A stretch of 64,000 nucleotides of DNA. It comes from Kudoa neothunni (taxonomy: Eukaryota; Animalia; Cnidaria). Made by a program: the position numbers and the translations under genes. Position 1 is the first letter of the stretch; the number at the start of each line of letters is the position of its first letter. The stretch spans positions 8,129,744-8,193,743 of the forward strand of contig OZ199840.1 in the NCBI GenBank assembly GCA_964304625.1, read 5' to 3'. Below the pieces are notes generated by a model. The model was not told where the DNA came from and searched no databases. It saw nothing but the letters and a program-made list of their open reading frames with translations. Positions 8,747 through 33,800 of the stretch are shown here, piece by piece.

Positions 8747-9759
8747 CTAGTTTGCTGTGGATACTCTAACTTTGAGGAGTTGCTCAAGTCGCTGGATTTC
8801 CGACAGAGATTTCGAATTGCGGATAGCTTCCTATAAAATGCACGAACAAATTGTATTGAGTTCAATCTATATAATGTAAAATAAAGTGCTACCCTAATCG
8901 ATTCGATATCTTTAAAAGAAGAATCCATATCAACCAAGCCATTTTCTGCTTCATCCTCATTACTAATTGTGAATTATTATACAACCAAAGACAATGCAAC
9001 TGTACTAGGTTCTAAGCAGAATCTGTTTTCTTATTTCATAACCGGCGGGAGAAGAGAAAAATTTGGTAGCTCTTTCTCTTTCCTATTCATCGTAAATGAT
9101 ACAATAAATCCACAAATTGCCATGCATTACTGTCGGCTTTATACGTTTAAAGTCCAACACCTTCAACTGTGGCAACATATACACAATGTAATTACGATAA
9201 ACTTTTCTTGAAGTGATTGGATTCCTTAACAAACTAAACACACGCACACTCAATAAAATTCGTCTTAAATCCATAAATAAAACCCACCTCAAATTGGTTA
9301 AATTTTTCAATTTTCTTAATGGATGAATTTCAACCAATTGATTTATGCTATTGTTTGTCATAATTAGATAGCTCAGATTGGGCAAATGCTCAGCTATATT
9401 CTCATCTACACTCCTAAATGTGAAGGGTTACCACAAGGCACAACGTTAGAGAATAATCGGTTTCTATGGACATTAAACTCATACGTAATGTGATTGTTGC
9501 ATAAAAACAATGTTGTCAATCTTTTCAAAAGTGGAAATCCGTCCAACTTTCTTATATCGTTATCACACATGTCGATTGCATCAAACTGATCCTAAATAAT
9601 GCCATTAACTTCGTCAGGTCATGTAGTTAGTGATTATACTAGTGTCGCACCCATGTTCTCTATCACATTGATTCGATAACCTCTTAGGTAGAGTTCCCGT
9701 TCATTCGAAACGTTCCTGTATTGAGGAGACTGGTTGATGAGGTCAGCTGTAAGTTTCAT
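8747..9759 (-). CDS. SNRPA1: U2 snRNP protein A' (leucine-rich repeat)
   Basis: MKLTADLINQSPQYRNVSNERELYLRGYRINVIENMGATL / DQFDAIDMCDNDIRKLDGFPLLKRLTTL ... LLRNPITSRKVYRNYIVYMLPQLKVLDFKRIK. First intron 9592-9639 (48 nt, GT-AG). Last exon end less certain. Confidence 0.95.
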
Positions 9760-10013
9760 ACTTGAGCTGCGCGCGCTCACTGCCAAGTTTGTACACGTTT
9801 TGCATCTGCTTTGGCGTGAGGTTAATAGTTGTTAAGGCGTTTAATGTCTAAATTTTATCTTTTTCTATTTTCCTTCTTATCTTTTGTGTCATTAATGTGA
9901 TTCATGCTACTTTTTAATTTATCGCACGATTTTATTTTATCTTTTCGTGTCCATCGTTAGTTTGAAATTTATGTAATAATACAATCTATAACGATAATGC
10001 TATTTAATTTTTC

Positions 10014-10090: not shown

Positions 10091-10246
10091 TCACTTTTTT
10101 CAGATCCAACGATTTAGAATGCAAAAATAATTATTTTTGTAAATTTCGATTTATCAAATGCTCAACACAAAAATAAGTATTATAGTAAACGAATTTTTTA
10201 AAAAATGAAATTCATGTTTTTGTAAAATCAAAAATTGAGGACTAAT

Positions 10247-12510
10247 TTATTTTTTTGTTAAGACCAAGAAACCGATAGCACATATCAACAGTGCAATTAA
10301 AACTCCACCAACTATCAATCTAAATTATCATTAGAACCGCATGACAGCTGAAAATATTACATAATCCTGGATCCGCCGACATTAGCGCTAAATAAAAATT
10401 AAAAATCGATTAAATAATCAGAGAGATAACTATATTACCTATTTGATGTGCCTAAAAAGAATGAGAATAAATGATTGGTTAATATAGTTTACCTTGTTTA
10501 GCAGTTTCTGGTGATGTTGGATCATCATTGTCTCTGCTCGTTCCACTCCAAAGATTCACTACGATCGGCTCACTACTGTATCTTGCCTGTACTCTCATCG
10601 AGCCTTGTTTGTAGGAAGCAGCATTATAGAAAGTTATTTCTTGGTTGCATTTTCCCTCCCATCTTGTTGTTTTATCAAATAATCCATAGGTGTATTTTAT
10701 CGCCCCATTTACTATTTCAGCAAAAGTAAAATCACATATTTGGTCTGGGTCCACTTCTGCCATAGTGGTTGTCACAATCAAATCGGTGTTATTCCATGTG
10801 TGGGTAACATTAATTTTTTGAAGCGTTTCAGCTTAATAAATGTTATTGAGGAATTCTACTGCACATTACTTGTTGATACTGCCACCACGTTTGTTTCAAG
10901 GTCACTAATATATTTGCCAAATAAATATTTGAACTCGTATTTGGTATCGGGTAAAAGATTTTTAATGATAAGTGGTTGTCCACATAAACCTGAACAATCA
11001 ACCGATTCTTCGCATTCAGAAGGACTAAAAGATGTTGCACCCTCCATTTTTTGTTGAATTTTGCAGTATACACCATCAAATAGAGGTTCGTTTGGTGCTA
11101 TAGTCATCCCTACATGTTCGTAGTATGTTTTTATCTCAGGTTTTTGTGTTATGTTGTAGTCAGCTTAATTTAATTTTAGATCAATTATTTTTTTAATTTT
11201 TACCTGTTTTAAAAAGTTTTTCTGCGATATAAGATGTAGTAGTACTACTACCGGTTTGAGTATAAGTCACTTTTGCAATGTATTTTGTGTTTGGTTCAAG
11301 CCCGTGAATCGTAGCATCAATGCAAGTTGTTGGACATACTGTTTTCAGATCTTCACTACACTTGATGTCAAGGTTTACCTTAGGGAATTCCTGCTTCCTT
11401 AACTCAATTTTACAAGTTGCAGTAGTCATATCGGTATCTTTAAGATTTTCGATAGAAAGAGTCGCATTAGTTTCTTTGGCAGTCACAGTAAGATTACTCT
11501 TTCCAACTATTTTATTACGTTAAGTTGAAAAAAATAAAAAAGTTTATTCACGTCTTAGCGTTTTCACTACTCCTACGAAATGTCTGGTGGATACTTTTAC
11601 GTCAAAATCTTTGTCATTGCTCTCAGTAAAGTCTAGTTCCATTACAGCGTCAGTGCAGAGTTGATAACAAGGGGAGTTGTCACTAGAGGTGAAGCATTTT
11701 GATGTGTAACTAGATTCAACCTTTTTTTTAATTTCGAATTTGCATATTTCATCTATCATATCTTCGTCGAAAATAATATTTATTTTGTTGGTATCATGTT
11801 TAGAAATGTGATAAGGAAGTTGTTCCAATGGACTGAAATCCATGTACTCGTTATTTTTTCTATTCACGTGTATTTTCGGTTGGTTGACTCCACAAGAGAG
11901 TTCGATTGAGTCGCCGGCTGAGTCGAAGAACCCAGTAAGGTGGTTTTCCTGGTTGCATTCGGTGTTGGGAGTAGGCGTGAACAGATCGAGGACTTTATCT
12001 CCACTGGTTAATCTGCAAGTTTGAGGATAACTGCAGACATTTTTTGTTGTGAATTTAATAGCGGTCGCATTTACTGTAAAATGAGTATTAGGAGTTTGAT
12101 CAGTAACTATAATAAAATAAGCCAAAATCTCAAAAAATATAGTACTATGAACTATTTTGAGAGTCTCGGTTGCGTATTTCGATTTTATCTGTAGATAATA
12201 AGAAGGAAAAGCAGCTCCAGTAGAAATCGTGTATTTTCCCGCACAAGAAACGTCTTGAAGTGTTTCGTTTTCAGATTCACCTTTAACATAGTGGTAAAAA
12301 AATTCATTTTTTTCCAGCAATTTAATATCGCATTTAGTTCCAGACACTCCCTCAAGTTGTAGATGGATTTTATCTTCTAAAGTGTTTTGATCTCGTTCAA
12401 CGTAGTATTTATGTGAGTGAACTAAAAAAATCTAATACGAGAGACTCGGTGACCACCCGAATTATACCATTATAGCAGAGTGAAAAAATCAACAATGTAA
12501 TGACCAACAT
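10247..12510 (-). CDS. Novel type-I membrane protein 'B1': signal peptide, six Cys-rich FN3/Ig-like modules, short stalk, TM helix, TKK tail (about 640 aa)
   Basis: ATG 12510 MLVITLLIFSLCYNVHS. Module exons separated by phase-1 GT-AG introns. FN3-like motifs IHGLEPNTKY and IKNLLPDTKYEF. Micro-exons 10439-10451 (13 nt) and 10361-10387 (27 nt) lead in frame to IILIVGGVLIALLICAIGFLVLTKK*. Confidence 0.85.
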
Positions 12511-13193
12511 TTTTGGTTCTTAATTATAACGTCTTTATTATTTTTAATAAGAATTATACAAATGAATGTAACTTGAGCTGACAATAGAAACGAGAAAAAT
12601 ATATTAAGGACGAATTCTGCGAGTGAATGACAGTTTAACAATAGAATTGAAAGTCAATAAGTAGTATTTACATCCGAAACTAAATTCTGGTGTCAGTTAT
12701 TGATAACTTCATAGGAAACAAACATGTTTAAGACAAAATTCTGAATTTAGAAGTAAAATACATTTTCTTACGGAGAATAATGACAGGACACTTCTATGTT
12801 AGCCAATTGGTAGACCAAATGGATATAATCAATAATTTTTAAAAAATTCACAAACAAGCATGTAACCTTAGATTAATTTATAGAATAAACGTTCACAAAA
12901 AATGGTTCAATGTACATCTATTTTTATAATTTTTCATTTCTATGTAGTTATTCCGATATTGTAATCAATACGATTTAATTTTATAAAAATATGTTTATCC
13001 AACAATAAACAATAAATATCATAAAAATGTCGACCAATCTAATAACTAAATATGTTATTTTATTTAAATATAAAAATACACAAGAATTAATAAGAGAAAT
13101 CAATTTTAACTATAAAACTAAAAGCTTGTTCACTGTTTCATTAATGGCGAACAATAAGATATTCCAAAATTAATGCTGTTATAATAACTATTT

Positions 13194-15212
13194 TTAGGTT
13201 CTTGTGGTGGTAACAGTGGATTCAGTTGTTGGAGTTGTAACAGTTTCTGGGTCTGCAATAAAGAGTTCCAATTCAACTGGCTCTCCATCATATCTGCGCT
13301 TTACAATCACTGTAGCCGATTTATATTCAGGAACATCGAAGAAAGTGATTCTTGAATTGCATGGCTCATTCCAACCGTTTGTTCGGTCGTGCACAGCAAG
13401 AATCTTTGCCTCCTGCTCTTTAGTTTTTTCCACAAATGTAAAGTCACAAATTCCGTCCGTTCCACCTCCTACCTTTACTGTTATTTCCAAATCATTTTCT
13501 GTCCATTTATATCCAAGTTCTACCTTTTTAAATAGAGACCCTAAAATTTATATTAATTTTTAAATTTACACCTCTATAGTACCTGTTCTAACATTTTTCG
13601 TGAGAGCTTCAGTTTCCGAGTAGAATCTCTGTGGAACTGCTTTAAAAGTGTATTCTGTATCCGGTTGCAGCTTAGTGACAGTAAATTCTGAAGTGCACAA
13701 GCCATAGCAGTTGTAGGATTCTTCACACACCGATCGAACAAAATTAATTGTGCCTTTCAATGCTTGCATTATCATACACTCTGCTTTATAGTCTTCGTGA
13801 TCTATTTGTTGTGGAACTATCACAACATTTTGAGGGTATGTTGTAATGTCAGCGGTAACATCATCAATTTTAGCTATTTATTATTATTATTAATATTCAG
13901 AAAATAAATCCTTATACCAGTTTTAAAAATTTTATTTATCTGAATCGCATTCTCATCACCACTCGAAGCTTTGTACTGTACATTAACCACATATTTGGTA
14001 TCGGCCTCAAGATGTAATAATTTTATATCATTTTCACACGAAGCAAAAACAGTATGCCCTTTTAATCCTACGTGGTTTGAGTCCACTTTGACGTAGTTCT
14101 CTTGTACAAACATTTCCACCTTGCATTGGTCACTGCCTGCATGAAGCGCAGAGACTCCCAATGTAGCCCCATATGTAAGGATATCCTTTATTTGGAAATC
14201 TTTTTTATCAGCTAACGATATAAGTTAAAATATTATTAATGATAATTAAATACTTGACATCAGCATTGATTCGGTTTCTACGCCCCTAGTGGATATTTTG
14301 ACATGAAATTCTTTATTATTGTTTTTATCATAATTTGTTTCCAATGTGACATTTTGACATATTTGGTAACAGATAATATTTTCACCAAGTTCGCATTTAG
14401 ATGTCAAAGTTTCACCTTTTTTAGCTATTTCAAACTTGCAAATCGTATCTGGAATAGGTTCTTCGAATATGATGTCTATTTTGTTATCAGTTGCATTAGC
14501 TGCGATTCTCACAGGATATCGTTTCAGTAGGTCTTTCTTATTACTTAGAAACATATTTTTATCAAAGAAAAGTTTTGGATTGTGTGGTCCACAGTAAAGT
14601 TCAAGGGGTTTATTGTAGATATTGTATAAACTTCTAAGCATGTATTCAGCACCACATTGAGGCTGTGAATCAAGGATGTAGCTCTGAACAGTAAACTGTC
14701 CAGATCTGATCTGACAAACGAAAGGAGATTCCTCGCACATGTGTTTGACGACGAATGCCACAGTTGATCCATCAAAGTGGTATGAGGAGAAGGGGACAGA
14801 TGAAGTAGCTAGAGAATAATATTAAATGAGAATGTAACTTTCGATAAATATACTGTGAACAACTTTGAGGTAGTCTGTTTTGGCTTTTGAGGCTATTTGA
14901 AGAAAATGATGAGGAGCGATGTGATCAGTATGAAAAGTGTATTCTCCGCTGCAAGGAACCTCACAAATGTTTCGACTACCACAGCTCACATCTCGATAAA
15001 AATAATAAGTATCATCTTTGGTGAATAACTTGATGCGACAAAGATGAGTTGGGTTTCCTTCTAGGGTCAAATGAATGGCATTCTTATGCAGCTGATTATC
15101 TCTTACGATGTAATACCTATGAAGTTGAACTATGTACAGAATTATTTATCGACAGTTATTCAATTAGGTCACCTGTATAAAAAAGGGTAAAGCACAAAAA
15201 AGCGAATTTCAT
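13194..15212 (-). CDS. Novel secreted paralog 'A1': signal peptide, six Cys-rich FN3/Ig-like modules, Thr-rich tail, no anchor (about 600 aa)
   Basis: ATG 15212 MKFAFLCFTLFYTVQL. Same exon layout and intron phases as B1. Motifs LHLEADTKY and VTKLQPDTEYTF. Ends PETVTTPTTESTVTTTRT*. Confidence 0.82.
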
Positions 15213-18058
15213 AATTTTGTGCTATTGCCGATCGCAAATAATGAATTCAATACGGATTAACGAACTTTTATATTATTTAGATAAGTTAATTTAGTTATTT
15301 GAGTAGGAGTGGTTAGGATTAAATAAAGGTTCTAGAAATGTAAAACAATTTTTTTAATAAACCAATGTTTCAATCTTAACTTATTGTAATATTAAAATTA
15401 CCATATGTTTTATTTTCGTAACTATAAATAATTAATTTATTGATATATTTAAAAACTTAATATCCATCGCGAACTGAAATTATTTTAGGTAGTGTCATAA
15501 AGGTAAAAATTGAGATATTTCAATGAATTATATATAAATGGAGTAATTGTACAAAGTTATTCACAATAATATAATACCATCCGAAGCGAGATCGTATATT
15601 GTCTAGGTTTACATTAATATAAACATAAATAACTGTCATTGGGGAACAAATTGAATGGTTTAAAACTTCCGATAACTCTCGTCATATACAAATATATATT
15701 ATCGTAGTTGGTTTTACCAAGAAAATAATTTAATACAAATTTTAATAATTAATTTGAATTCATGTATCATTTTAATATAATATCTCAGCTAATTATATTC
15801 AGAATGGTGAAACTATTACTTTACTGTGTTGATTAAGAAATTTTCCGTATCAATTTAAAAAATTTTTTATTGCATATTAGATCATTCATGTCGTAAAAAT
15901 AATAATATTTTTAACTTATTAAGTTATTAAAATACAACTATAAAATCCACACAGTAGAAGAAAACTTTTTGCTTTCAATTTTTTTAAACTAGCACTAATG
16001 CCCAGCATTACCTTGTATTATGTGATGGAAGATTTTAACTTCTATTTTTGAATGGAGAAATTCAACGGAAGAATTAATCTAATCAGCACATTAAACAATG
16101 TTAATTTTATTTTTCTATTTTAATTTATGCATTTTAAAACTTGTCATTATTTTTGCAATATGATGAATTAGATAAACAAAATTATGCGCACACTTTCCAT
16201 TCAAATATAAATAGAGGGAATGTTGGAAATTAATGAGTATTTTTAAGTTTATTTTTCAAGTTATTGACCCAAAATATAATTCCCTTAATTTTATGAGAAA
16301 TGTAATTAACTATTAAAGTTCATTTATTTATTAAACAACATTATTAATTAACTTAAATAGGACTTTCAGTTCTCTTAAAAATTTTGCGATAAAAATTAAT
16401 TCTTCTAGTTATAAAATTTATTATTAGTCTACAAACGATGAAAAAAATAAAATTGATCTAACATGCGTCAGAAATAAAAATAATATTACTCCTTTTTTTT
16501 ACAATTTTATAAAGGATATTAATTAATGATGTTTTAAAAAGCTGTGAGCGGTAACTTACATATTCACACTATTTAACATAATTTCCCAATTTTTAAACGA
16601 ATGCAACTTTTTTTATACAAAAATACTTACTGGTTCAAAAATGTACACATTTAATTATCAAAATACGATTAAATTTAAAGTGTAAAGGTGTGTTTGGTTT
16701 GAAGAATTACAGTAATGCTTAAAAATTTAAATATCAACATGTTTTCTCGAAGGTGTGCACCCTTGTAAAAATGAAATTTGTTTGATTGCCCTAAAAAATT
16801 TCTTTTATTGAACGATTGTTAGATTGACAAAAACTTTGTGAAAATATCGGTTAGATCGAATAAACCAATAATTTCGTATTAATTTATATGGCATGTATTG
16901 AGATTGAGAGAGGATTGTATTTTGTGCAAAAGTAATCGTGAATATAAATTCTTAAACTACGTATAGAACGCGGTTTCGCATATTTTCATGCGGATTTTAT
17001 ATCATAATGACTTAGTGCTAGCGAAAAGAAAATTATATATTGATTTGAATATTAACTTTAAGATTTGGGGTCTGGGGGTAAGGAATAATTAGGTTACTAA
17101 GAACTTAAACATGATTTAAAAAATTGTCTCATCAAATATAGAAACTTAACGAATTAATGATTCCAGCTATTTTTCAAGTAAGTTTAGGAAAACAAACAAA
17201 TGAATAAAAACTTATCGAAAACACGAATGGAGTTTCAATCTCAATCTACATATTTGATAAAAAGAAATTTTCACATCTCAGGAATTCTAATGGAGCATGA
17301 TTTTCATTTAATAAGTTATCACAAAAATTTAATTATTTGAAAACTCTACGCAGATCTTACATCGTTTTTAGAATGCTAATAGAACTACTAAATTATTCCT
17401 TAATGGTAACAATTTATAATCTCAAATTATGTGTTTTGTTCAAAATAATCGTAAGTCTTTTTGCTTAAAATGTATCTATAATGCTTTAACAATGAATCTT
17501 TATTTTAAAAAAATGTAATACGTTACAGATTTTAAGGGAAATGCAAAAACTCTCGTAAATGTAACGTTAATAGTTTAATTTGTCTTAAAATTACTCCAAA
17601 CAGACATATGTAACATTTTTGAAACATTCTACATCAAATCAAACAAATTTTCTTCGTATATATTGAGTGGAAGGTCATTATAATCGACTTTCGCTCCGAA
17701 GTAAACAAACATCAATATTATTCAGGTACTTTTTAATCTGCTATTTGAACAGACAACCAGAAAATTCCTTACTTTTTACCTCGATATTGATTATATTTTT
17801 ACTTCTAAGTAAATGAAAATTTATTATTGATGATTCCATCTATTCAAATGCAAACTAAAATATGTATTTAAAAAAAGCTGATACTTTGCACAAGCGCATT
17901 TGTGGACACGTCAGGGTTGGCAATTTCGTTCAAAAAATTTGAGGTTGTTATTTCGTTCGCGGTCGTTCATTAATACTTTGTGCAAATTTGGAGTCTTTCA
18001 AACGAACACAAACTTACCATCCCGCCCTAGACTATTGGAAGATTCTAAATATCGACAT

Positions 18059-23409: not shown

Positions 23410-25390
23410 TCTTTAAAGGACAACCCGGGGCTCCACGAGCCCATATACACTAACCGGATTAATTATAGTATTAATGTGTTAATTAATGCATTAATTCGTG
23501 GTCTCTCTTAACGCTAGCTGTGTTGTATAATAACGCATTGATAAGAAAAACAATAAGAATAAATATTCTACTAATTTTTTGAGATACAATTAAAACAAGT
23601 AATGTTCCTCGCGGAATGCTCGCTACATACACTTTTTTTGCAAGGGGAACACGCTTATTCCTACGAATTACGTGGCTTGGACAAAAGTGACATCGCTTTC
23701 GTCTGTTATCTTCGCAGATTTGGATTTGGTTGGATACATTATTGGAAAATTGATATCCAATAATTTCCATCGGGCGTTTCAAAGCGGGTTGGGTAGAAAT
23801 TAATGGATTTTTGAATTTTCTTTCTTGTTCACCTTTTATTAACGAATAAGACAAATCCAATAGAAATCTTTGTCTTCTACCAGTTTTATCAGTCCTCATG
23901 TAGGTAGGATTTCTATTTATGAAAATTACATATGCGTTGAATGCAGCCACATCTAATAATTGGCAAAACACCGCGAATGGCCAACGTCGACATTTCCTCT
24001 TGCAAGAATATGTTGAAACACATTGATCTAATGTGTCAACGCCACATTTTTTTTGTTTTAGTCTAAGATTGCCTGAGGCTTAGCATGGTATTCTTTACTT
24101 ACATTTTGAGTGCGGTGTTCTGATGAAAGAATAACCACTGCCTTATTTTTACGCGGAACATACGAAATAAGGTTGAGTACTTTGTAAAAACCAAATAGCG
24201 ATGAGAACATATTTCTTGATCTATGCGCCAAAAATTCTGGGGGTATAGAAGTTCTGCATTTACGCACAGTTCCAAGAATTGATGTTTTCCTTTCATACAA
24301 ATATTCAGCCAATTTCCACGAAGTAAAATAATTGTCGAAGGTGATACTACGGCCCGCATCCAAAAGGTGGTGTGTTAAATTTACCACAACATTAAAAGGT
24401 AGGTTGGATTCACGGTAACTGTCAATTTTACCCAAATATGGAATTATGTTTGAAACATAAAATGTGTCGCTGTCGCAAACAATCCATAATTTCAAACCGT
24501 ATTTCGATGGTTTTTTGGGTATGTACACTAAAAATGAAACTCGCCCCCGAAAAGGATACAGCTGTTCATCAACAGTTAAATTAGGACCTGGGATATAGCT
24601 AGTTCTACAGATGCCAGTAAATTCATCGAATATTTTTTTTATCAGTGAAAATTTATCTCCCATCTCATCGATGCCTTTGTGATTTGTGTACAACATGATT
24701 TCTTCCATCATTTGTTTAGTTATGAAATGATTGAAGCAATCAAGTGGTGTCGTCGAATCGAAAGAATCAATTGGCTTCCCTTGTACAATACTGCAGTCTA
24801 TTACATTATGACAGGAAGTTCGTCCAGGAGTGGGCTGGGAAGTCCAAATAATAGATGTGTCTTTCGACAAATAATTATTAAGGGAATCTCGAGTGTTACA
24901 GTCATGTGAAACAATTTGTGAAGAAGAATCTTGATTGAATACGTTTAGTTGTCCCTTAGATGAATCTATGAATAATGAAATTAAGATTTTATATTTTTTC
25001 GATAGACCAACCGTCAAATTCATGTAGTAAACTCTCGGTTAATTCGTTATCATCCTCCAAGAAATTTTTTAGCACGTTTGAAGATATACTTTCAGTGTCA
25101 AATGATATGTCAGTAAATAAACGGGAATCTTCCATTATAACTGTTTGGTGCAAATTTGGGATCAAATTTTGTTACGTACAAACATAACATGGGCTTAATA
25201 TATATTCCGAGAGATGAAAAAAGGTCTTAAAACCATCAAAAAAATTTTTCCCATGAATAACATCAATTGATAGATAATTAATTTTTATGAATTTACGTGA
25301 AATTTGAACCGAAAAAAACTGGTCTAACCTAACTAATTGACGATGTATCACGTGGATGGGCTCATGGAGCCCAGGGGTGTCCTTTAAGGG
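23410..25390 (-). mobile_element. piggyBac transposon with PGBD4-like transposase pseudogene
   Basis: About 35-bp TIRs (tctttaaaggacaacccggggctccacgagcccat / atgggctcatggagcccaggggtgtcctttaaggg), TTAA on the left and TTAC on the right. Motifs TVDEQLYPFRGR, KPSKYGLK, ITFDNYFTS, GVDTLDQ. Premature stop plus frameshift near 24050, a frameshifted Cys-rich domain and an apparent internal deletion. Confidence 0.93.
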
Positions 25391-25619: not shown

Positions 25620-25848
25620 GGATCAAGTTATGTCGTTTGTCCCGTTAAATGTATTCTATTGAAAAAAATATAATAAAGAACACTCTAAAGTTTATTTTTA
25701 ATTTTTAAATATTTTTTGATGAAATGCAATAAATTTTTAAATATAATTAGATATATCAAATGTTCAACACAAAAATAAGTATTATAGTAAACGAATTTTA
25801 TAAAAAATGGAATTAATGTTTTTGTAAAATCAAAAATTGAGGACTAAT

Positions 25849-28107
25849 TTATTTTTTTGTTAAGACCAAGAAACCGATAGCACATATCAACAGTGCAATT
25901 AAAACTCCACCAACTATCAATCTAAATTATCATTAGAACCGCATGACAGCTGAAAATATTACATAATCCTGGATCCGCCGACATTAGCGCTAAATAAAAA
26001 TTAAAAATCGATTAAATAATCAGAGAGATAACTATATTACCTATTTGATGTGCCTAAAAAGAATGAGAATAAATGATTGGTTAATATAGTTTACCTTGTT
26101 TAGCAGTTTCTGGTGATGTTGGATCATCATTGTCTCTGCTCGTTCCACTCCAAAGATTCACTACGATCGGCTCACTACTGTATCTTGCCTGTACTCTCAT
26201 CGAGCCTTGTTTGTAGGAAGCAGCATTATAGAAAGTTATTTCTTGGTTGCATTTTCCCTCCCATCTTGTTGTTTTATCAAATAATCCATAGGTGTATTTT
26301 ATCGCCCCATTTACTATTTCAGCAAAAGTAAAATCACATATTTGGTCTGGGTCCACTTCTGCCATAGTGGTTGTCACAATCAAATCGGTGTTATTCCATG
26401 TGTGGGTAACATTAATTTTTTGAAGCGTTTCAGCTTAATAAATGTTATTGAGGAATTCTACTGCACATTACTTGTTGATACTGCCACCACGTTTGTTTCA
26501 AGGTCACTAATGTATTTGCCAAATAAATATTTGAACTCGTATTTGGTATCGGGTAAAAGATTTTTAATAATAAGTGGTTGTCCACATAAACCTGAACAAT
26601 CAACAGATTCTTCGCATTCAGAAGGACTAAAAGATGTTGCACCCTCCATTTTTTGTTGAATTTTGCAGTATACACCATCAAATAGAGGTTCGTTTGGTGC
26701 TATAGTCATCCCTACATGTTCGTAGTATGTTTTTATCTCAGGTTTTTGTGTTATGTTGTAGTCAGCTTAATTTAATTTTAGATCAATTATTTTTTTAATT
26801 TTTACCTGTTTTAAAAAGTTTTTCTGCAATATAAGATGTAGTACTACTATCGGTTTGAGTATAAGTCACTTTTACAATGTATTTTGTGTTTGGTTCAAGC
26901 CCGTGAATCGTAGCATCAATGCAAGTTGTTGGACATACTGTTTTCAGATCTTCACTACACTTGATGTCAAGGTTTACCTTAGGGAATTCCTGCTTCCTTA
27001 ACTCAATTTTACAAGTTGCAGTAGTCATATCGGTATCTTTAAGAGCCGCAATAGAAAGAGTTGCATTAGTTTCTTTGGCAGTCACCGTAAGATTACTCTT
27101 TCCAACTATATGATATTTAAATAACAATTATTAAAGAAGGTAAATTACTCCTTAGAGTTTTCTCTGCTCCTACGTGATTTCTAGTTGATACTTTTACGTT
27201 AAAATCTTTTTCCGAATTCTCATCGAAGGAAATGACCATTTCTGCGTCAGTGCAGAGTTGATAACAATCGGGGGTGGTGCCCGAGACAGAACATTTTGAA
27301 ATATAATCATTTTCATTTTTTTTTTTAATTTCAAATTTACATATTTCATCTTTCATATCTTCATCAAAAATAATATCTATTTTTCCAGTTTCTTTTTTAA
27401 CGATGTGATAAGGAAGTTGTTCCAATGGACTGAAATCCATGTACTCGTTATTTTTTCTATTCACGTGTATTTTCGGTTGGTTGACTCCACAAGAGAGTTC
27501 GATTGAGTCGCCGGCTGAGTCGAAGAACCCAGTAAGGTGGTTTTCCTCGTTGCATTCGGTGTTGGGAGTAAGCGTGAACAGATCGAGGACTTTATCTCCA
27601 CTGGTTAATCTGCAAGTTTGAGGATAACTGCAGACATTTTTTGTTGTAAATTTAATAGCGGTCGCATTTACTGTAAAATGAGTTTCAGGAGTTTGGTCAG
27701 TAACTATAAGAACATCAGCCAAAATCTCAAAAAAAATAGTACTACGAATTATTTTAAGAGTCTCGGTTGCGTATTTCGATTTTATCTGTAGATAATAAGA
27801 AGGAAAAGCAGCTCCAGTAGAAATCGTGTATTTTCCCGCACAAGAAACGTCTTGAAGTGTTTCGTTTTCAGATTCACCTTTAACATAGTGGTAAAAAAAT
27901 TCATTTTTTTCCAGCAATTTAATATCGCATTTAGTTCCAGACACTCCCTCAAGTTGTAGATGGATTTTATCTTCTAAAGTGTTTTGATCTCGTTCAACGT
28001 AGTATTTATGTGAGTGAACTAAAAAAATCTAATACGAGAGACTCGGTGACCACCCGAATTATACCATTATAGCAGAGTGAAAAAATCAACAATGTAATGA
28101 CCAACAT
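25849..28107 (-). CDS. Novel type-I membrane protein 'B2' (copy of B1 with divergent module 3)
   Basis: Same exon structure as B1 with an intact frame. ORFs 27117-27944, 26795-27127, 26458-26709 and 26081-26383 overlap its module exons. Confidence 0.85.
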
Positions 28108-28790
28108 TTTTGGTTCTTAATTATAACGTCTTTATTATTTTTAATAAGAATTATACAAATGAATGTAACTTGAGCTGACAATAGAAACGAGAAAAATATA
28201 TTAAGGACGAATTCTGCGAGTGAATGACAGTTTAACAATAGAATTGAAAGTCAATAAGTAGTATTTACATCCGAAACTAAATTCTGGTGTCAGTTATTGA
28301 TAACTTCATAGGAAACAAACATGTTTAAGACAAAATTCTGAATTTAGAAGTAAAATACATTTTCTTACGGAGAATAATGACAGGACACTTCTATGTTAAC
28401 CAATTGGTAGACCAAATGGATATAATCAATAATTTTTAAAAAATTCACAAACAAGCATGTCACCTTAGATAAATTTATAGAATAAACGTTCACAAAAAAT
28501 GATTCAATGTACATCTATTTTTATAATTTTTCATTTCTATGTAGTTATTCCGATATTGTAATCAATACGATTTAATTTTATAAAAATATGTTTATCCAAC
28601 AATAAACAATAAATATCATAAAAATGTCGACCAATCTAATAACTAAATATGTTATTTTATTTAAATATAAAAATACACAAGAATTAATAAGAGAAATCAA
28701 TTTTAACTATAAAACTAAAAGCTTGTTCACTGTTTCATTAATAGCGAACAATAAGATATTCCAAAATTAATGCTGTTATAATAACTATTT

Positions 28791-30812
28791 TTAGGTTCTT
28801 GTGGTGGTAACAGTGGATTCAGTTGTTGGAGTTGTAACAGTTTCTGGGTCTGCAATAAAGAGTTCCAATTCAACTGGCTCTCCATCATATCTGCGCTTTA
28901 CAATCACTGTAGCCGATTTATATTCAGGAACATCGAAGAAAGTGATTCTTGAATTGCATGGCTCATTCCAACCGTTTGTTCGGTCGTGCACAGCAAGAAT
29001 CTTTGTTTCCTGCTCCTTAGTTTTTTCCACAAATGTAAAGTCACAAATTCCATCCGTTCTATCTCCCACCTTTACTGTTATTTCCAAATCATTTTCTGTC
29101 CATTTATATCCAAGTTCTACCTTTTTAAATAGAGACCCTAAAATTTATATTAATTTTTAAATTTACACCTCTATAGTACCTGTTCTAACATTTTTCGTGA
29201 GAGCTTCAGTTTCCGAGTAGAATCTCTGTGGAACTGCTTTAAAAGTGTATTCTGTATCCGGTTGCAGCTTAGTGACAGTAAATTCTGAAGTGCACAAGCC
29301 ATAGCAGTTGTAGGATTCTTCACACACCGATCGAACAAAATTAATTGTGCCTTTCAATGCTTGCATTATCATACACTCTGCTTTATAGTTTTCGTGATCT
29401 ATTTGTTGTGGAACTATCACAACATTTTGAGGGTATGTTGTAATGTCAGCGGTAACATCATCAATTTTAGCTATTTATTATTATTATTATTAATATTCAG
29501 AAAATAAATCCTTATACCAGTTTTAAAAATTTTATTTATCTGAATCGCATCAGCTTCACTACTCGAAGCTTTGTACTGTACATTAACCACATATTTGGTA
29601 TCGGCCTCAAGATGTAATAATTTTATATCATTTTCACACGAAGCAAAAACAGTATGCCCTTTTAATCCTACACGGTTTGAGTCCACTTTGACGTAGTTCT
29701 CTTGTACAAACATTTCCACCTTGCATTGGTCACTGCCTGCATGAAGCGCAGAGACTCCCAATGTAGCCCCATATGTAAGGATATCCTTTATTTGGAAATC
29801 TTTTTTATCAGCTAACGATATAAGTTAAAACATTATTAATGATAATTAAATACTTGACATCAACATTGATTCGGTTTCTACACCTCTAGCGGATATTTTG
29901 ACATGAAATTCTTTATTACTGCTTTTATTATAATCTGTTTCCATTGTAACATTTTGACATATTTGGTAACATTTAATACCATCACCGAGTCCGCATTTAG
30001 ATTCTAAAGTTCCATCTTTTTTAACAATTTCAAATTTGCAAATAGTGTCGGGAATAGGTTCTTCGAATATGATGTCTATTTTGTTATCAGCTGCATTAGC
30101 TGCGATTCTCACAGGATATCGTTTCAGTAGGTCTTTCTTATTACTTAGAAACATATTTTTATCAAAGAAAAGTTTTGGATTGTGTGGTCCACAGTAAAGT
30201 TCAAGGGGTTTATTGTAGATATTGTATAAACTTCTAAGCATGTATTCAGCACCACATTGAGGCTGTGAATCAAGGATGTAGCTCTGAACAGTAAACTGTC
30301 CAGATCTGATCTGACAAACGAAAGGAGATTCCTCGCACATGTGTTTGACGACGAATGCCACAGTTGATCCATCAAAGTGGTATGAGGAGAAGGGGACAGA
30401 TGAAGTAGCTAGAGAATAATATTAAATGAGAATGTAACTTTCGATAAATATACTGTGAACAACTTTGAGGTAGTCTGTTTTGGCTTTTGAGGCTATTTGA
30501 AGAAAATGATGAGGAGCGATGTGATCAGTATGAAAAGTGTATTCTCCGCTGCAAGGAACCTCACAAATGTTTCGACTACCACAGCTCACATCTCGATAAA
30601 AATAATAAGTATCGTCTTTGGTGAATAACTTGATGCGACAAAGATGAGTTGGGTTTCCTTCTAGGGTCAGATGAATGGCATTCTTATGCAGCTGATTATC
30701 TCTTACGATGTAATACCTATGAAGTTGAACTATGTACAGAATTATTTATCGACAGTTATTCAATTAGGTCACCTGTATAAAAAAGGGTAAAGCACAAAAA
30801 AGCGAATTTCAT
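28791..30812 (-). CDS. Novel secreted paralog 'A2' (copy of A1 with divergent module 3)
   Basis: Same exon structure as A1. ORFs 29846-30361, 29471-29761, 29163-29420 and 28791-29087. Confidence 0.82.
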
Positions 30813-33800
30813 AATTTTGTGCTATTGCCGATCGCAAATAATGAATTCAATACGTATTAACGAACTTTTATATTATTTAGATAAGTTAATTTAGTTATTT
30901 GAGTAGGAGTGGTTAGGATTAAATAAAGGTTCTAGAAATGTAAAACAATTTTTTTTTAATACACCAATGTTTCACATCTTAACTTATTGTAATATTAAAA
31001 TTACCATATGTTTTATTTTCGTAACTATAAATAATTAATTTATTGATAGATTTAAAAACTTAATATCCATCGCGAACTGAAATTATTTTAGGTAGTATCA
31101 TAAAGGTAAAAATAGAGATATTTCAATGAATTATATAAATGGAGAATTTGCACAAAGTTATTCACAATAATATAATACCATCCGAAGCGAGATCGTATAT
31201 TGTTTAGATTTACATTAATATAAACATAAATAACTGTCATTGGGGAACAAATTGAATGGTTTAAAACTTCCGATAACTCTCGTCATATACAAATATATAT
31301 TATCGGAGTTGGTTTTACAAAGAAAATAATTTAATACAAACTTGAATAATTAATTTGAATTCATGTATCATTTTAATATAATATCTCAACTAATTATATA
31401 CAGAATGGTGAAACTATTACTTTACTATGTTGATTAAGAAATTTGAATTATAAAATTACAAAATATTTCGTTACCTATTAGATCATTTATTTCATAAAAA
31501 TTAATAATTTTCCTTAGTGAATTCAATTATTATTAATATTTAAGGTTAAATACATTTATAAATTCTTCATGATACCGATGAAGTCATTACTTTCAATCTT
31601 TTTAAATTTAAAGCGTTGAAAATTATAAAACATTTGAACAAGTAAATTAAATACAAATTTTAAAAATAAATTTTTGAGTAAAACAATAATATACTCATCT
31701 CCAAATCCTCTGAAACCCGATCCAACCTATTAAAACGACCCCTCGTGTTAATTCAGATCTACCAGAACTTAAATATTCATATACTTTGTTACATGAAACA
31801 CATTTTAATCAGTTAAAACTATTATATTAGATGAATAAAATAAAATATAATTATTAATAAATTTTCCAGTAGGAATTGAATAATTTGAGCAACGTTCTTG
31901 TTGGCCACCGGAAAAGTTATCGACAAAAAATATTTTAATTATTTTATAAAAGTCAATATAAAAATTTTTCCTTATTATTCTGATACAAAATAAAAGGAAA
32001 GGTGCAAATTTTTTGTTTATTTGGTTTTCATTTCATAATTCAAAGGATGACCCAAAATTTCTTTTAGAAGTTTTTTAGTGATTTTTTCATAAAGAAAATT
32101 TTAATATTTCTACATGTGACTAATTTCTACGAGGTATCACTGAGACATTTTGAACGAGCAATAAAGATTAATTTTACGCTTTAAACCTTTTTCTTCAAAT
32201 TATGAGGAAAAACTAGCAGTCATTTAAGTGCAGATTTTATATATCTATCAATTAAATTTTTAAAGAAGAATGATCATATTTTAAACTTATTTTGTTTAGA
32301 TCTCTTGTAAAAAATACTCATCTCTAGTTATTCGCATTAATTTAAATTTAAAGTGATTTATAAATTGCTGAAAGACTATAATATCGACCTCAATTAGTTT
32401 GGTGTAGAAAACACCCAAGAAACTTTTGAGTGTTTCAAATAAATAATCTTATTATTAATTTATATTAAATATGTTATTAGTCATATAAAACAGGATGGAT
32501 AATTTATAAATATCTGTGTTACAGTTGACGAATTTTCCCTTATTTACTTAAGGTATCTTACCAAAATCTCGAAAAAACTAAAGTTACATTAGGAAATATT
32601 AGATTTGTATCCTAACAAAATCCTTCTTATACAAAACAACCATATTCTAAAATAATTTGTTGCATAACCAATAAAAATAAGTCAGTTATATTTATATTAA
32701 AAAAATAAAGAATGAATTAAAATAGGGAATCTTGCACATAGGTTTTCAAGGTCTCAAACACAATTCCTATAAAAATATTTCTTCCCAAAAAATTGTTGAA
32801 ATAAACATTATTTTATCGTCATTAAAACTATCTCGAAAAATGGACCAAAAATTATTTAAATTATTCAAAAATATAATCAGGAAAACCTGGATTAAGTTAT
32901 TTAATAATTCTCATGGTATACCCCCCAGATTAAATTCATATTACCCCTTTTATTTTTATTAAGGGTCGAGTTTTATTTATTTATTCAAAAATATTTTAAA
33001 TGTTCATTGCAAATTGATTTTTACACTTTTAAAAATCAGATTTCTTTGAATATAAGGCAGTATTTAAGAATGTTAGTGCACAATAAATGAGCTTACTCTC
33101 ATCTCATATTTACACCATTTATTGGCCAAATAAGTTATAGTTTATAAACAGTGTTAGAATTAACACTTCAATGTCAAATTCCAAATTTTTGGATAAATTC
33201 TTAGAACTTATTCTTCAAAACAACCACAGGATATTTCTTAACAAATTTTCACGAAAATAATGATACGTTCATTAAAGAGATGCTGAAAGCTTCTTTAGTT
33301 TAGAACCCGCTATCGCCAGCTTTTGGTGTATTATAACACCAATAGTAAACTAAAAACAACCTGTTATGATACTTATAGATCTTATCTTTATAGAAAGCCG
33401 AGTATAATGTAGTTCAAAAATAGTTATTCGTTATAAAATTAAAAATAAAATATATTCAGCTATCAAAGTAAAAATCAAGTTTGACTGTAGAGTTTCAGTA
33501 ATAATAAATAATAGATGCGAAATACGATTTTATTGTTCTATATAACTTTGAATGTCTGTTAAACAAAACTAGAGACTATTATCGAAAAATCGATCATTTA
33601 ATTCCATATTTGTATTTCATTATTTCAACATAACAAGCAAATACAGATCGCATTGTAATCATGCTTGTATTTTAGGATTATTTTTGTATTATCCTACTTG
33701 AAACGAGTGATTATCATGTTTTTAGAATTAGATTATTAAAAAAATCATTATTTTTACGATTCGAACGTGTAGATAAATTTTATTTATATTCTAAGAATAT

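What the first reader, a model, noticed from the sequence alone, without database searches (positions are those of the whole stretch)
11511..11805. Sharply bounded divergent tract in gene B includes a wholly replaced intron
Seen: B1 11511-11805 and B2 27110-27402 diverge heavily, then identity resumes abruptly at atgtgataaggaag. The tract has synonymous changes and an unalignable intron (gtgaataaactttttt...aaaatag versus gtaatttaccttcttt...catatag). Inference: point selection on amino acids cannot replace an intron. The patch was either imported by segmental gene conversion from a diverged donor, or it is an old difference protected from homogenisation.
Basis: partly seen in the sequence, partly recalled or inferred. 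Interest (0 to 1): 0.8.

Follow-up and report, generated by a model that had tools for sequence, protein, structure and literature searches.

The report
Divergence island between converted surface-protein gene copies
Two neighbouring copies of a surface-protein gene in a fish parasite (probably Kudoa neothunni) are almost identical except for a sharp 360-base stretch that is as different as distant family members, a known footprint of gene conversion but in a large gene family I found no description of.

Summary
The tract is real. Units 10126-15909 and 25728-31511 are about 98.5-99% identical, but 11446-11805 (B2: 27045-27402) is 74.6% identical, with 93-95 differences and sharp edges. The intron is diverged (27/45), not "wholly replaced": B1's resembles paralog L011's and B2's resembles L012/L013's.

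Synonymous divergence is 0.585 in the tract against 0.027 elsewhere (Fisher p = 7e-16), and dN/dS is below 1. Point selection is excluded. Hypermutation is unlikely, because distant paralogs have equal dS inside and outside the tract.

Neither patch has a match above 80% anywhere in the assembly. At 69 of 93 differing sites both states recur in other paralogs. PHI finds recombination (p ≤ 0.001). Other near-identical pairs diverge in the same FN3-like domain. Gene A has a matching island, and both unit edges hold short zones at 71-74% identity.

Best reading (about 0.55): old duplicates whose flanks were homogenised by gene conversion, leaving a mosaic hypervariable domain unconverted. Rival (about 0.27): recent duplication plus import from an unsampled donor.

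The family has at least 106 exon-3 matches in this genome and almost none elsewhere. The scan has already reported this same phenomenon on other DNA of this genome.

The parts
10126..15909 (-). Unit 1: paralogous genes A1 (about 13194-15500) and B1, with the intergenic DNA between them
   Evidence: Self-BLAST gives one 5.8 kb pair. tblastn of the B1 exons shows A and B are 31-39% identical paralogs with the same module order.
25728..31511 (-). Unit 2: genes A2 and B2
   Evidence: Outside the two islands the three segments differ by 1.08%, 1.49% and 1.67%.
10250..12510 (-). Predicted B1 coding region: 9 exons, 1920 nt, about 639 aa. Signal peptide, Cys-rich and FN3-like ectodomain modules, Thr/Ser/Pro stalk, TM helix, 3-residue tail. 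Predicted introns: 12422-12467, 12107-12145 (in frame), 11507-11551, 11164-11203, 10832-10869, 10452-10492, 10388-10438, 10320-10360.
   Evidence: Three-frame reading, GT-AG sites and phases, and conservation across paralogs. No RNA support; the 13-nt and 27-nt micro-exons are prediction only.
11446..11805 (-). B1 divergence island: last 84 codons of exon 3 (second FN3-like domain), intron 3, and the first ~20 codons of exon 4
   Evidence: 74.6% identity against 98.9% in the flanks. dS 0.585, dN 0.22. Difference positions listed.
27045..27402 (-). B2 counterpart of the island
   Evidence: Its best match elsewhere in the genome is 80% (C1:17104092).
11507..11551 (-). The B2 counterpart is 27106-27148 (43 nt).
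   Evidence: B1/B2 27/45, B1/L011 34/45, B2/L013 34/43. A 27-nt exact block shared by B1 and L011 at 11538-11564 spans 8 B1/B2 differences.
14263..14491 (-). A1 divergence island in the homologous domain of gene A. The A2 counterpart is about 29863-30091.
   Evidence: 85% identity. dS 0.30 against 0.027 in the rest of gene A. A1 and A2 are each other's best match at 88%, and the next best is 82%.
15844..15905 (.). 5' edge zone with residual older homology between U1 and U2
   Evidence: Ungapped 44/62 (71%), between 52/54 just inside and 18/55 just outside. Random 62-mers give 17.9 +/- 3.7 matches, maximum 34.
10127..10160 (.). 3' edge zone with residual older homology between U1 and U2
   Evidence: Ungapped 25/34 (74%), between 66/70 inside and 21/67 outside.

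Best explanation
A1-B1 and A2-B2 are two copies of a two-gene unit from a large family of type I membrane proteins with FN3-like ectodomains. Gene conversion between paralogs keeps most of the unit nearly identical (concerted evolution). The second FN3-like domain of exon 3, with the adjacent intron and the start of exon 4, was not overwritten. It therefore keeps an older divergence, about as deep as the split from sister loci L011, L012 and L013. That domain is itself a mosaic of short blocks shared with several paralogs. Shown: the depth contrast, the absence of a donor in this assembly, the shared polymorphism, the recombination signal, recurrence of the pattern in other pairs, and the residual homology at both unit edges. 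Inferred: that the flanks were homogenised, as opposed to the island being imported. Also inferred: that the island persists because conversion stalls at a roughly 25% heterology, or because copies that lose diversity in this exposed domain are selected against, or both.
For: (1) Tract dS is 0.585 against 0.027 elsewhere. B against L011/L012 is 0.52-0.65 in the tract and 0.39-0.44 elsewhere. For distant paralogs dS is equal in both partitions (0.84/0.84 and 1.5/1.3), so the tract has a deeper coalescence, not a higher mutation rate. (2) Whole-genome searches with all four patch sequences find nothing above 80% (B) or 82% (A) apart from the sister copy. (3) The same domain is the diverged part in other pairs: L012/L013 95.6% flank against 76.5% patch, L025/L026 99.4/90.1, C2 cluster pairs about 95/80. 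Block edges differ between pairs. (4) Gene A has an island in the homologous domain, and both genes have the same background dS of 0.027. (5) Both unit edges pass through zones of 71-74% identity before homology ends, the same level as the island. (6) PHI gives p <= 0.001 in the patch for two subfamilies and in the C2 flanks. At 69 of 93 differing sites both states occur in other paralogs. Exact blocks of 21-31 nt are shared with L011, L013, L012 and L016. (7) The pattern matches the 'peak of divergence' described for duplicates under ongoing gene conversion (PMC3924837).
Against: The three low-divergence segments are about equally diverged (1.08, 1.49, 1.67%). A single recent event explains that more simply than several separate conversion tracts. 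At 360 nt and about 230 nt, the islands have the length of ordinary conversion tracts, as an import would. The AU test does not reject B1+B2 as a clade in the patch (p = 0.29). dN/dS is below 1 even in predicted loops (0.33-0.88), so selection for diversity is not shown. The edge zones are short and AT-rich. U1 and U2 share a derived 3' boundary compared with L011-L013, which also fits a later duplication. No orthologous loci or independent read sets were available.
Confidence: 0.55

Rival explanations
1. Recent duplication plus import. The 5.8 kb unit was duplicated recently (background dS about 0.027). The hypervariable domains of B and of A were then each overwritten by a short conversion tract from a diverged family member. 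That donor has since been lost, or exists only in another haplotype or strain not represented in this assembly.
For: Uniform low divergence of the three flank segments. Island lengths typical of conversion tracts. Conversion is clearly active in the family. B1 groups with L011 in the patch tree at 94/92. U1 and U2 share a derived 3' boundary. X1 contigs carry variants at 12249 and 12337 that are not U1/U2 differences, so unsampled alleles or copies exist.
Against: No donor above 80-82% for any of the four patches in the 40 Mb assembly. The same lost-donor assumption would be needed again for L012/L013, L025/L026 and the C2 pairs. The edge zones at 71-74% are not expected at a fresh duplication breakpoint. 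B1-L011 patch distance is 0.34 against 0.14 in the flanks, so extant loci are not recent donors.
Confidence: 0.27
2. Assembly or sampling artefact. The two patches are alleles, or strain variants in a mixed infection, of a single locus, and the assembler laid them out as two tandem copies.
For: Half depth in the patches relative to the flanks fits two alleles as well as two paralogs. The assembly is reported to be a by-product of host sequencing (10.64898/2026.02.11.705288). Another family array on C2 lies next to a 200-N gap.
Against: The copies are separated by 9.8 kb of unique DNA that includes a transposase-like ORF, and they have unrelated outer flanks. That is not what haplotig duplication looks like. 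They also differ by indels and scattered clusters across the whole unit. The same pattern occurs between loci on different chromosomes.
Confidence: 0.05
3. Local hypermutation or strong positive selection on new point mutations after a recent duplication.
For: Variation is concentrated in predicted loops of an exposed domain. U1 carries a few clustered changes of its own, for example 13455-13470, with no counterpart in the fetched paralogs.
Against: dN/dS is 0.38 in the tract, with dS raised about 20-fold. Distant paralogs have equal dS inside and outside the tract. At 69 of 93 differing sites both states already exist in other paralogs. The intron follows family lineages.
Confidence: 0.03

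Closest known systems
Peak of divergence between duplicates kept similar by gene conversion (human red/green opsin exon 5; reviewed in PMC3924837)
   Same: Neighbouring duplicates tens of kb apart, very low divergence over exons, introns and flanks, and one sharply raised local peak. Independent evidence of conversion among the copies.
   Different: In opsins the peak surrounds two known functional sites, and the age of the duplication is known from orthologs. Here neither target sites nor orthologs are known, the peak covers a whole domain plus an intron, and it is itself a mosaic drawn from many paralogs.
Multigene immune or recognition families in which conversion among many paralogs and pseudogenes creates haplotype diversity (MHC, plant SI and R genes, Ig V segments; PMC3924837)
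   Same: A large clustered family with some frameshifted members, short shared blocks, and variation focused in loops of a beta-sandwich domain.
   Different: No population data, no proven selection (dN/dS < 1), and no known ligand. The family is unrelated in sequence to these.
Escape from concerted evolution in cell-surface Ig-superfamily genes (ruminant CEACAM1 paralog, PMC7042247, seen in title and abstract only)
   Same: A surface receptor family homogenised by conversion, with part of a member escaping.
   Different: I did not read the paper's details. The organism and family differ.
Myxozoan candidate variant surface proteins (VSP-like and RIFIN/STEVOR-like genes reported in Sphaerospora molnari, bioRxiv 10.64898/2026.02.11.705288)
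   Same: A myxozoan parasite with expanded families of single-pass membrane proteins, proposed there to underlie antigenic variation whose mechanism is unknown.
   Different: VSPs are described there as more than 10% cysteine with many CXXC motifs and a conserved tail. The Kudoa proteins here are built of FN3-like modules with a few conserved cysteines and a 3-residue tail. I found no sequence link.

Membership tests
Divergence peak under interlocus gene conversion | Local peak of divergence, silent sites included, within otherwise near-identical duplicates | tested here: met
   dS 0.585 against 0.027, Fisher p = 7e-16. Sharp edges.
Divergence peak under interlocus gene conversion | Independent evidence of gene conversion among the paralogs | tested here: met
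   PHI p <= 0.001 in the patch and in the C2 flanks. Shared exact blocks. Overdispersed background differences.
Divergence peak under interlocus gene conversion | The duplication is older than the flank divergence suggests | tested here: inconclusive
   Supported by the edge zones at 71-74% and the absence of a donor. No orthologs were available to date the duplication.
Divergence peak under interlocus gene conversion | Selection maintains the peak | tested here: inconclusive
   dN/dS is 0.38 overall and 0.33-0.88 in loops. The island recurs in the same domain of A and B and in other pairs, which is suggestive only.
Fibronectin type III / Ig-like domain proteins | Pfam fn3 match above the gathering score | tested here: not met
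   The best fn3 score is 16.2 bits against a cut-off of 25, in exon 4. Exon 3 has no match.
Fibronectin type III / Ig-like domain proteins | Seven-strand beta-sandwich fold | tested here: inconclusive
   The model has two all-beta domains at pLDDT 68. Foldseek's top hits are tandem FN3 domains with probability up to 0.99 but TM about 0.3.
Programmed cassette-type antigenic variation (VSG, vlsE, pilE kind) | Silent donor cassettes near-identical to the segment in the expressed gene | tested here: not met
   No match above 80% to either B patch in the genome. B1 and B2 are both complete genes with open frames in every predicted exon.
Programmed cassette-type antigenic variation (VSG, vlsE, pilE kind) | Switching of the expressed variant during infection | not testable with these tools
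   The one RNA run laid (X10) held none of this organism's reads on the stretch.

The most novel reading that the evidence does not exclude
The second FN3-like domain of this family of at least 100 members is the variable, host-exposed determinant of a Kudoa variant surface antigen or recognition system. On this reading, conversion among intact and frameshifted paralogs keeps reshuffling short blocks in that domain while homogenising the scaffold. That would give myxozoans a germ-line repertoire, or conceivably a somatic one, for evading fish immunity, whose molecular basis is stated to be unknown (10.64898/2026.02.11.705288).
Probability: 0.15. Interest if true: 0.7.

Novelty: new member of a known kind. 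Interest (0 to 1): 0.4.

Why it matters
The process is textbook: concerted evolution with an island that escapes it. The setting is less ordinary. The genes belong to a large family of membrane proteins with almost no relatives among 1.84 billion protein clusters, in a myxozoan parasite of commercial fish. Antigenic variation has been observed in this group, but no mechanism is known. The island marks one FN3-like domain, in two paralogous genes and in several independent gene pairs, as the part of the protein that stays different. That makes the domain the obvious first target for expression, localisation and host-antibody studies. It is also a caution for annotation and phylogeny, because trees built from whole genes in this family will reflect conversion and not descent.

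Tried and rejected
- Pfam on nine exon translations gave only sub-threshold fn3-like hits.
- The search for homologous proteins on the 267-aa open frame found nothing. This is uninformative because of the tool's length limits.
- Raw reads from X8, X9 (DNA) and X10 (RNA) carried almost none of this organism. There is therefore no independent read support and no splicing evidence.
- The AU test did not reject B1+B2 as a clade in the patch, so I dropped the claim of proven topological incongruence.
- I suspected the near-equal spacing of U1/U2 (15,602 bp) and L016/L017 (15,588 bp) meant an ancient shared array. The C2 pair turned out to be a plain 15.25 kb tandem duplication with the spacer included and no spacer homology to the window. 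I rejected the idea as coincidence.
- I hoped the extent of L012/L013 similarity would separate import from protection. It did not.
- The five best outside hits are unnamed singletons.
- I did not search or fold the joined coding sequence.

Full report
**Setting**

The window is G000:C3:8129744-8193743 of a 40.26 Mb assembly in four contigs. Three contigs measure 17.15, 12.04 and 11.05 Mb, which leaves about 18 kb for the fourth. The DNA is about 30% G+C, with introns of 38-51 nt.

Earlier notes of this scan name the organism as Kudoa neothunni, a myxozoan parasite of tuna muscle. I did not verify this directly, but three things fit:
- A preprint reports a chromosome-scale K. neothunni assembly obtained as a by-product of host sequencing, and gives Kudoa mitochondrial genomes as 15.9-19.4 kb (10.64898/2026.02.11.705288).
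- The best-holding run, X1, consists of about 830 Mb of contigs, which is host-sized.
- Other runs under the same species label contain almost none of this DNA.

**The observation**

Self-BLAST finds a single repeat in the window: 10126-15909 against 25728-31511. A 50-column profile shows 98-100% identity throughout, with two exceptions. One is 11446-11805, at 66-82%. The other is a weaker patch at 14243-14490.

In the B tract 93-95 positions differ. No differences occur at 11806-11950 or at 11276-11445.

Two details need correcting:
- The tract extends 65 nt beyond the intron, into exon 4.
- The intron is 27/45 identical between the copies and aligns well across the family.

**Gene and protein**

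Each unit carries two minus-strand paralogs, A and B. They are 31-39% identical and have the same module order.

My predicted B1 model runs from 12510 to 10250. It has nine exons and a 1920-nt CDS. It encodes, in order:
- a signal peptide
- Cys-rich and FN3-like modules
- a Thr/Ser/Pro-rich stalk
- one TM helix
- a three-residue tail

The model rests on GT-AG sites, reading phase and conservation among paralogs. No RNA supports it.

The island covers the last 84 codons of exon 3, intron 3 and the first ~20 codons of exon 4. An AlphaFold model of exon 3, built from 16 family sequences, reached pLDDT 68. It shows two beta-sandwich domains, and the second (residues ~98-184) is the variable one. 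Foldseek's best hits are tandem FN3 domains, with probability up to 0.99 but TM about 0.3. Pfam fn3 stays below threshold.

A profile search of 1.84 billion cluster representatives found six hits, and the five I looked up are unnamed singletons. In this genome the same profile finds at least 106 places on all three chromosomes.

**What the divergence is**

Nei-Gojobori estimates for B1/B2:

| Partition | dS | dN |
|---|---|---|
| Tract | 0.585 | 0.22 |
| Rest of CDS | 0.027 | 0.007 |

- The synonymous contrast gives Fisher p = 7e-16.
- Among codons that keep the same amino acid, 18 of 70 differ in the tract and 8 of 465 elsewhere.
- dN/dS is 0.38 in the tract and below 1 in predicted loops across eight pairs (0.33-0.88).

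A higher local mutation rate is also unlikely. For distant paralogs dS is the same inside and outside the tract: 0.84 against 0.84 for B1/L014, and 1.5 against 1.3 for B1/L025.

The tract simply has a deeper coalescence. It is about as deep as the split of B from sister loci L011 and L012, where dS is 0.52-0.65 in the tract and 0.39-0.44 elsewhere.

**Family context**

The A-B unit recurs on all three chromosomes:
- L011 at 85.5% over 5.5 kb
- L012 and L013 at about 82-85%
- a cluster of eight on C2
- more distant copies

The same domain is the diverged part in other near-identical pairs:

| Pair | Flank identity | Patch identity |
|---|---|---|
| B1/B2 | 98.9% | 74.6% |
| L012/L013 (different chromosomes) | 95.6% | 76.5% |
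| L025/L026 | 99.4% | 90.1% |
| C2 cluster pairs | about 95% | about 80% |

Block edges differ between pairs. For example, L012 and L013 share intron 3 at 41/43 although their exon patch is diverged. This is a mosaic, not a fixed cassette.

Gene A has an island in the homologous domain, with dS 0.30 against 0.027 in the rest.

**Trees and recombination**

- In the flank tree B1+B2 is a 100/100 clade at path distance 0.011.
- In the patch tree B1 joins L011 (94/92), B2 sits in a polytomy, and the B1-B2 path is 0.46.
- An AU test does not reject B1+B2 in the patch (p = 0.29). I therefore rest the case on depth, not topology.
- PHI detects recombination in the patch for both subfamilies and in the C2 flanks (p <= 0.001). 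It finds none in the flanks of the B subfamily (p = 0.53).
- At 69 of 93 differing sites, both the B1 and the B2 state occur in other paralogs.
- B1 shares exact blocks with L011: 27 nt at 11538-11564, spanning 8 differences across the exon end and intron start, and 31 nt at 11640-11670. It shares 31 nt with L013 at 11756-11786.
- B2 shares exact blocks of 21-22 nt with L016 and L012.

**Import or protection?**

Whole-genome searches with each of the four patch sequences find no donor. The best matches, apart from the sister copy, are 80% for B and 82% for A.

Both unit edges pass through short zones of ungapped 71-74% identity before homology ends: 15844-15905 at 44/62, and 10127-10160 at 25/34. 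Random 62-mers give 17.9 +/- 3.7 matches, with a maximum of 34. That is the level of the island, and it is what a conversion tract lying on older paralogs predicts. A fresh breakpoint would end abruptly.

These two points, together with the recurrence in other pairs, make me favour old duplicates with homogenised flanks (0.55).

Several points weigh the other way:
- The three low-divergence segments are about equally diverged (1.08, 1.49, 1.67%).
- The islands have typical conversion-tract lengths.
- U1 and U2 share a derived 3' boundary relative to L011-L013.

A recent duplication followed by import from a lost or unsampled donor therefore remains a serious rival (0.27).

Background differences are themselves clustered (variance 1.69 against mean 0.70 per 50 nt). 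In several clusters U2 carries the state seen in L011-L013, while U1 carries changes of its own.

**Artefact check**

X1 contig depth is about half in both islands, and contigs with no differences cover 11416-11669 and 14233-14480. This fits two real sequences. It cannot by itself separate two paralogs from two alleles, and X1 may be the source sample.

The 9.8 kb of unique spacer, which contains a piggyBac-like ORF, and the unrelated outer flanks argue against a false duplication. I put this reading at 0.05.

**Comparison with what is known**

The pattern is the "peak of divergence" described for duplicates under ongoing gene conversion. It also matches the diversity-generating conversion known in MHC, SI, R and Ig gene families (PMC3924837). 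It is a new instance in a family I found no description of, not a new kind of system.

The scan's own earlier notes report the same phenomenon at several other places in this genome. One of those clusters, at C3:78-146 kb, is hit by my exon-3 profile. This finding is therefore one more example. It adds the silent-site dating, the parallel A and B islands, and the edge zones.

**Limits**

- I had no RNA evidence, no orthologs and no independent reads.

Noticed in passing
window 23483-25023 (-): Two adjacent ORFs (162 and 321 aa) that look like a piggyBac-type transposase split in two. They lie in the unique spacer, about 700 bp from the 3' end of unit 2. The identification is by eye and was not run through Pfam.
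   Followed up: no
G000:C2:8170000-8200800 (L029, L017, L031, L030, L016): A plain tandem duplication of 15.25 kb at 98.1% identity that includes an A-B unit and its spacer. The B genes L016 and L017 are identical over the 2.6 kb compared. A run of 200 N lies in the region. Its period (15,588 bp) nearly equals the U1/U2 spacing, but the spacers are unrelated.
   Followed up: partly
window 12249 and 12337: X1 contigs carry A>G and G>A at about 45% of the depth, at positions where U1 and U2 are identical. This points to allelic or strain polymorphism, or to a further copy that is not in the assembly.
   Followed up: no
window 12107-12145 (-): Predicted intron 2 of B1 is 39 nt long, in frame and free of stop codons, so retaining it would add 13 residues. 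It is also a small cluster of U1/U2 differences (10 within 73 nt at 12087-12159).
   Followed up: partly
L013, L020, L021, L022, L027: These B-type paralogs carry frameshifts in one or more exon blocks. They may be pseudogenes that could still serve as conversion templates, or homopolymer errors in the assembly.
   Followed up: no
L011:6914-8996, L012:1828-3638, L013:6491-9541: L011, L012 and L013 share 2-3 kb of homology downstream of gene B that U1 and U2 lack. The ancestral unit may therefore have been longer and held a further gene.
   Followed up: no
window 13455-13470 and 13951-13960: These are tight clusters of 4-5 differences in gene A, in exon 6 and exon 4. U2 matches L011 exactly over 86 nt and 24 nt respectively, while U1 carries changes found in none of the fetched paralogs.
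   Followed up: partly
window 10439-10451 and 10361-10387 (-): Predicted micro-exons of 13 and 27 nt lie between the stalk exon and the TM exon of B1. They are conserved across paralogs with flanking GT-AG sites but have no RNA support.
   Followed up: partly
window 9406-9786 (-): ORFs just downstream of unit 1 look by eye like an LRR protein of the U2 snRNP A' type. This is an unrelated housekeeping neighbour that unit 2 lacks.
   Followed up: no
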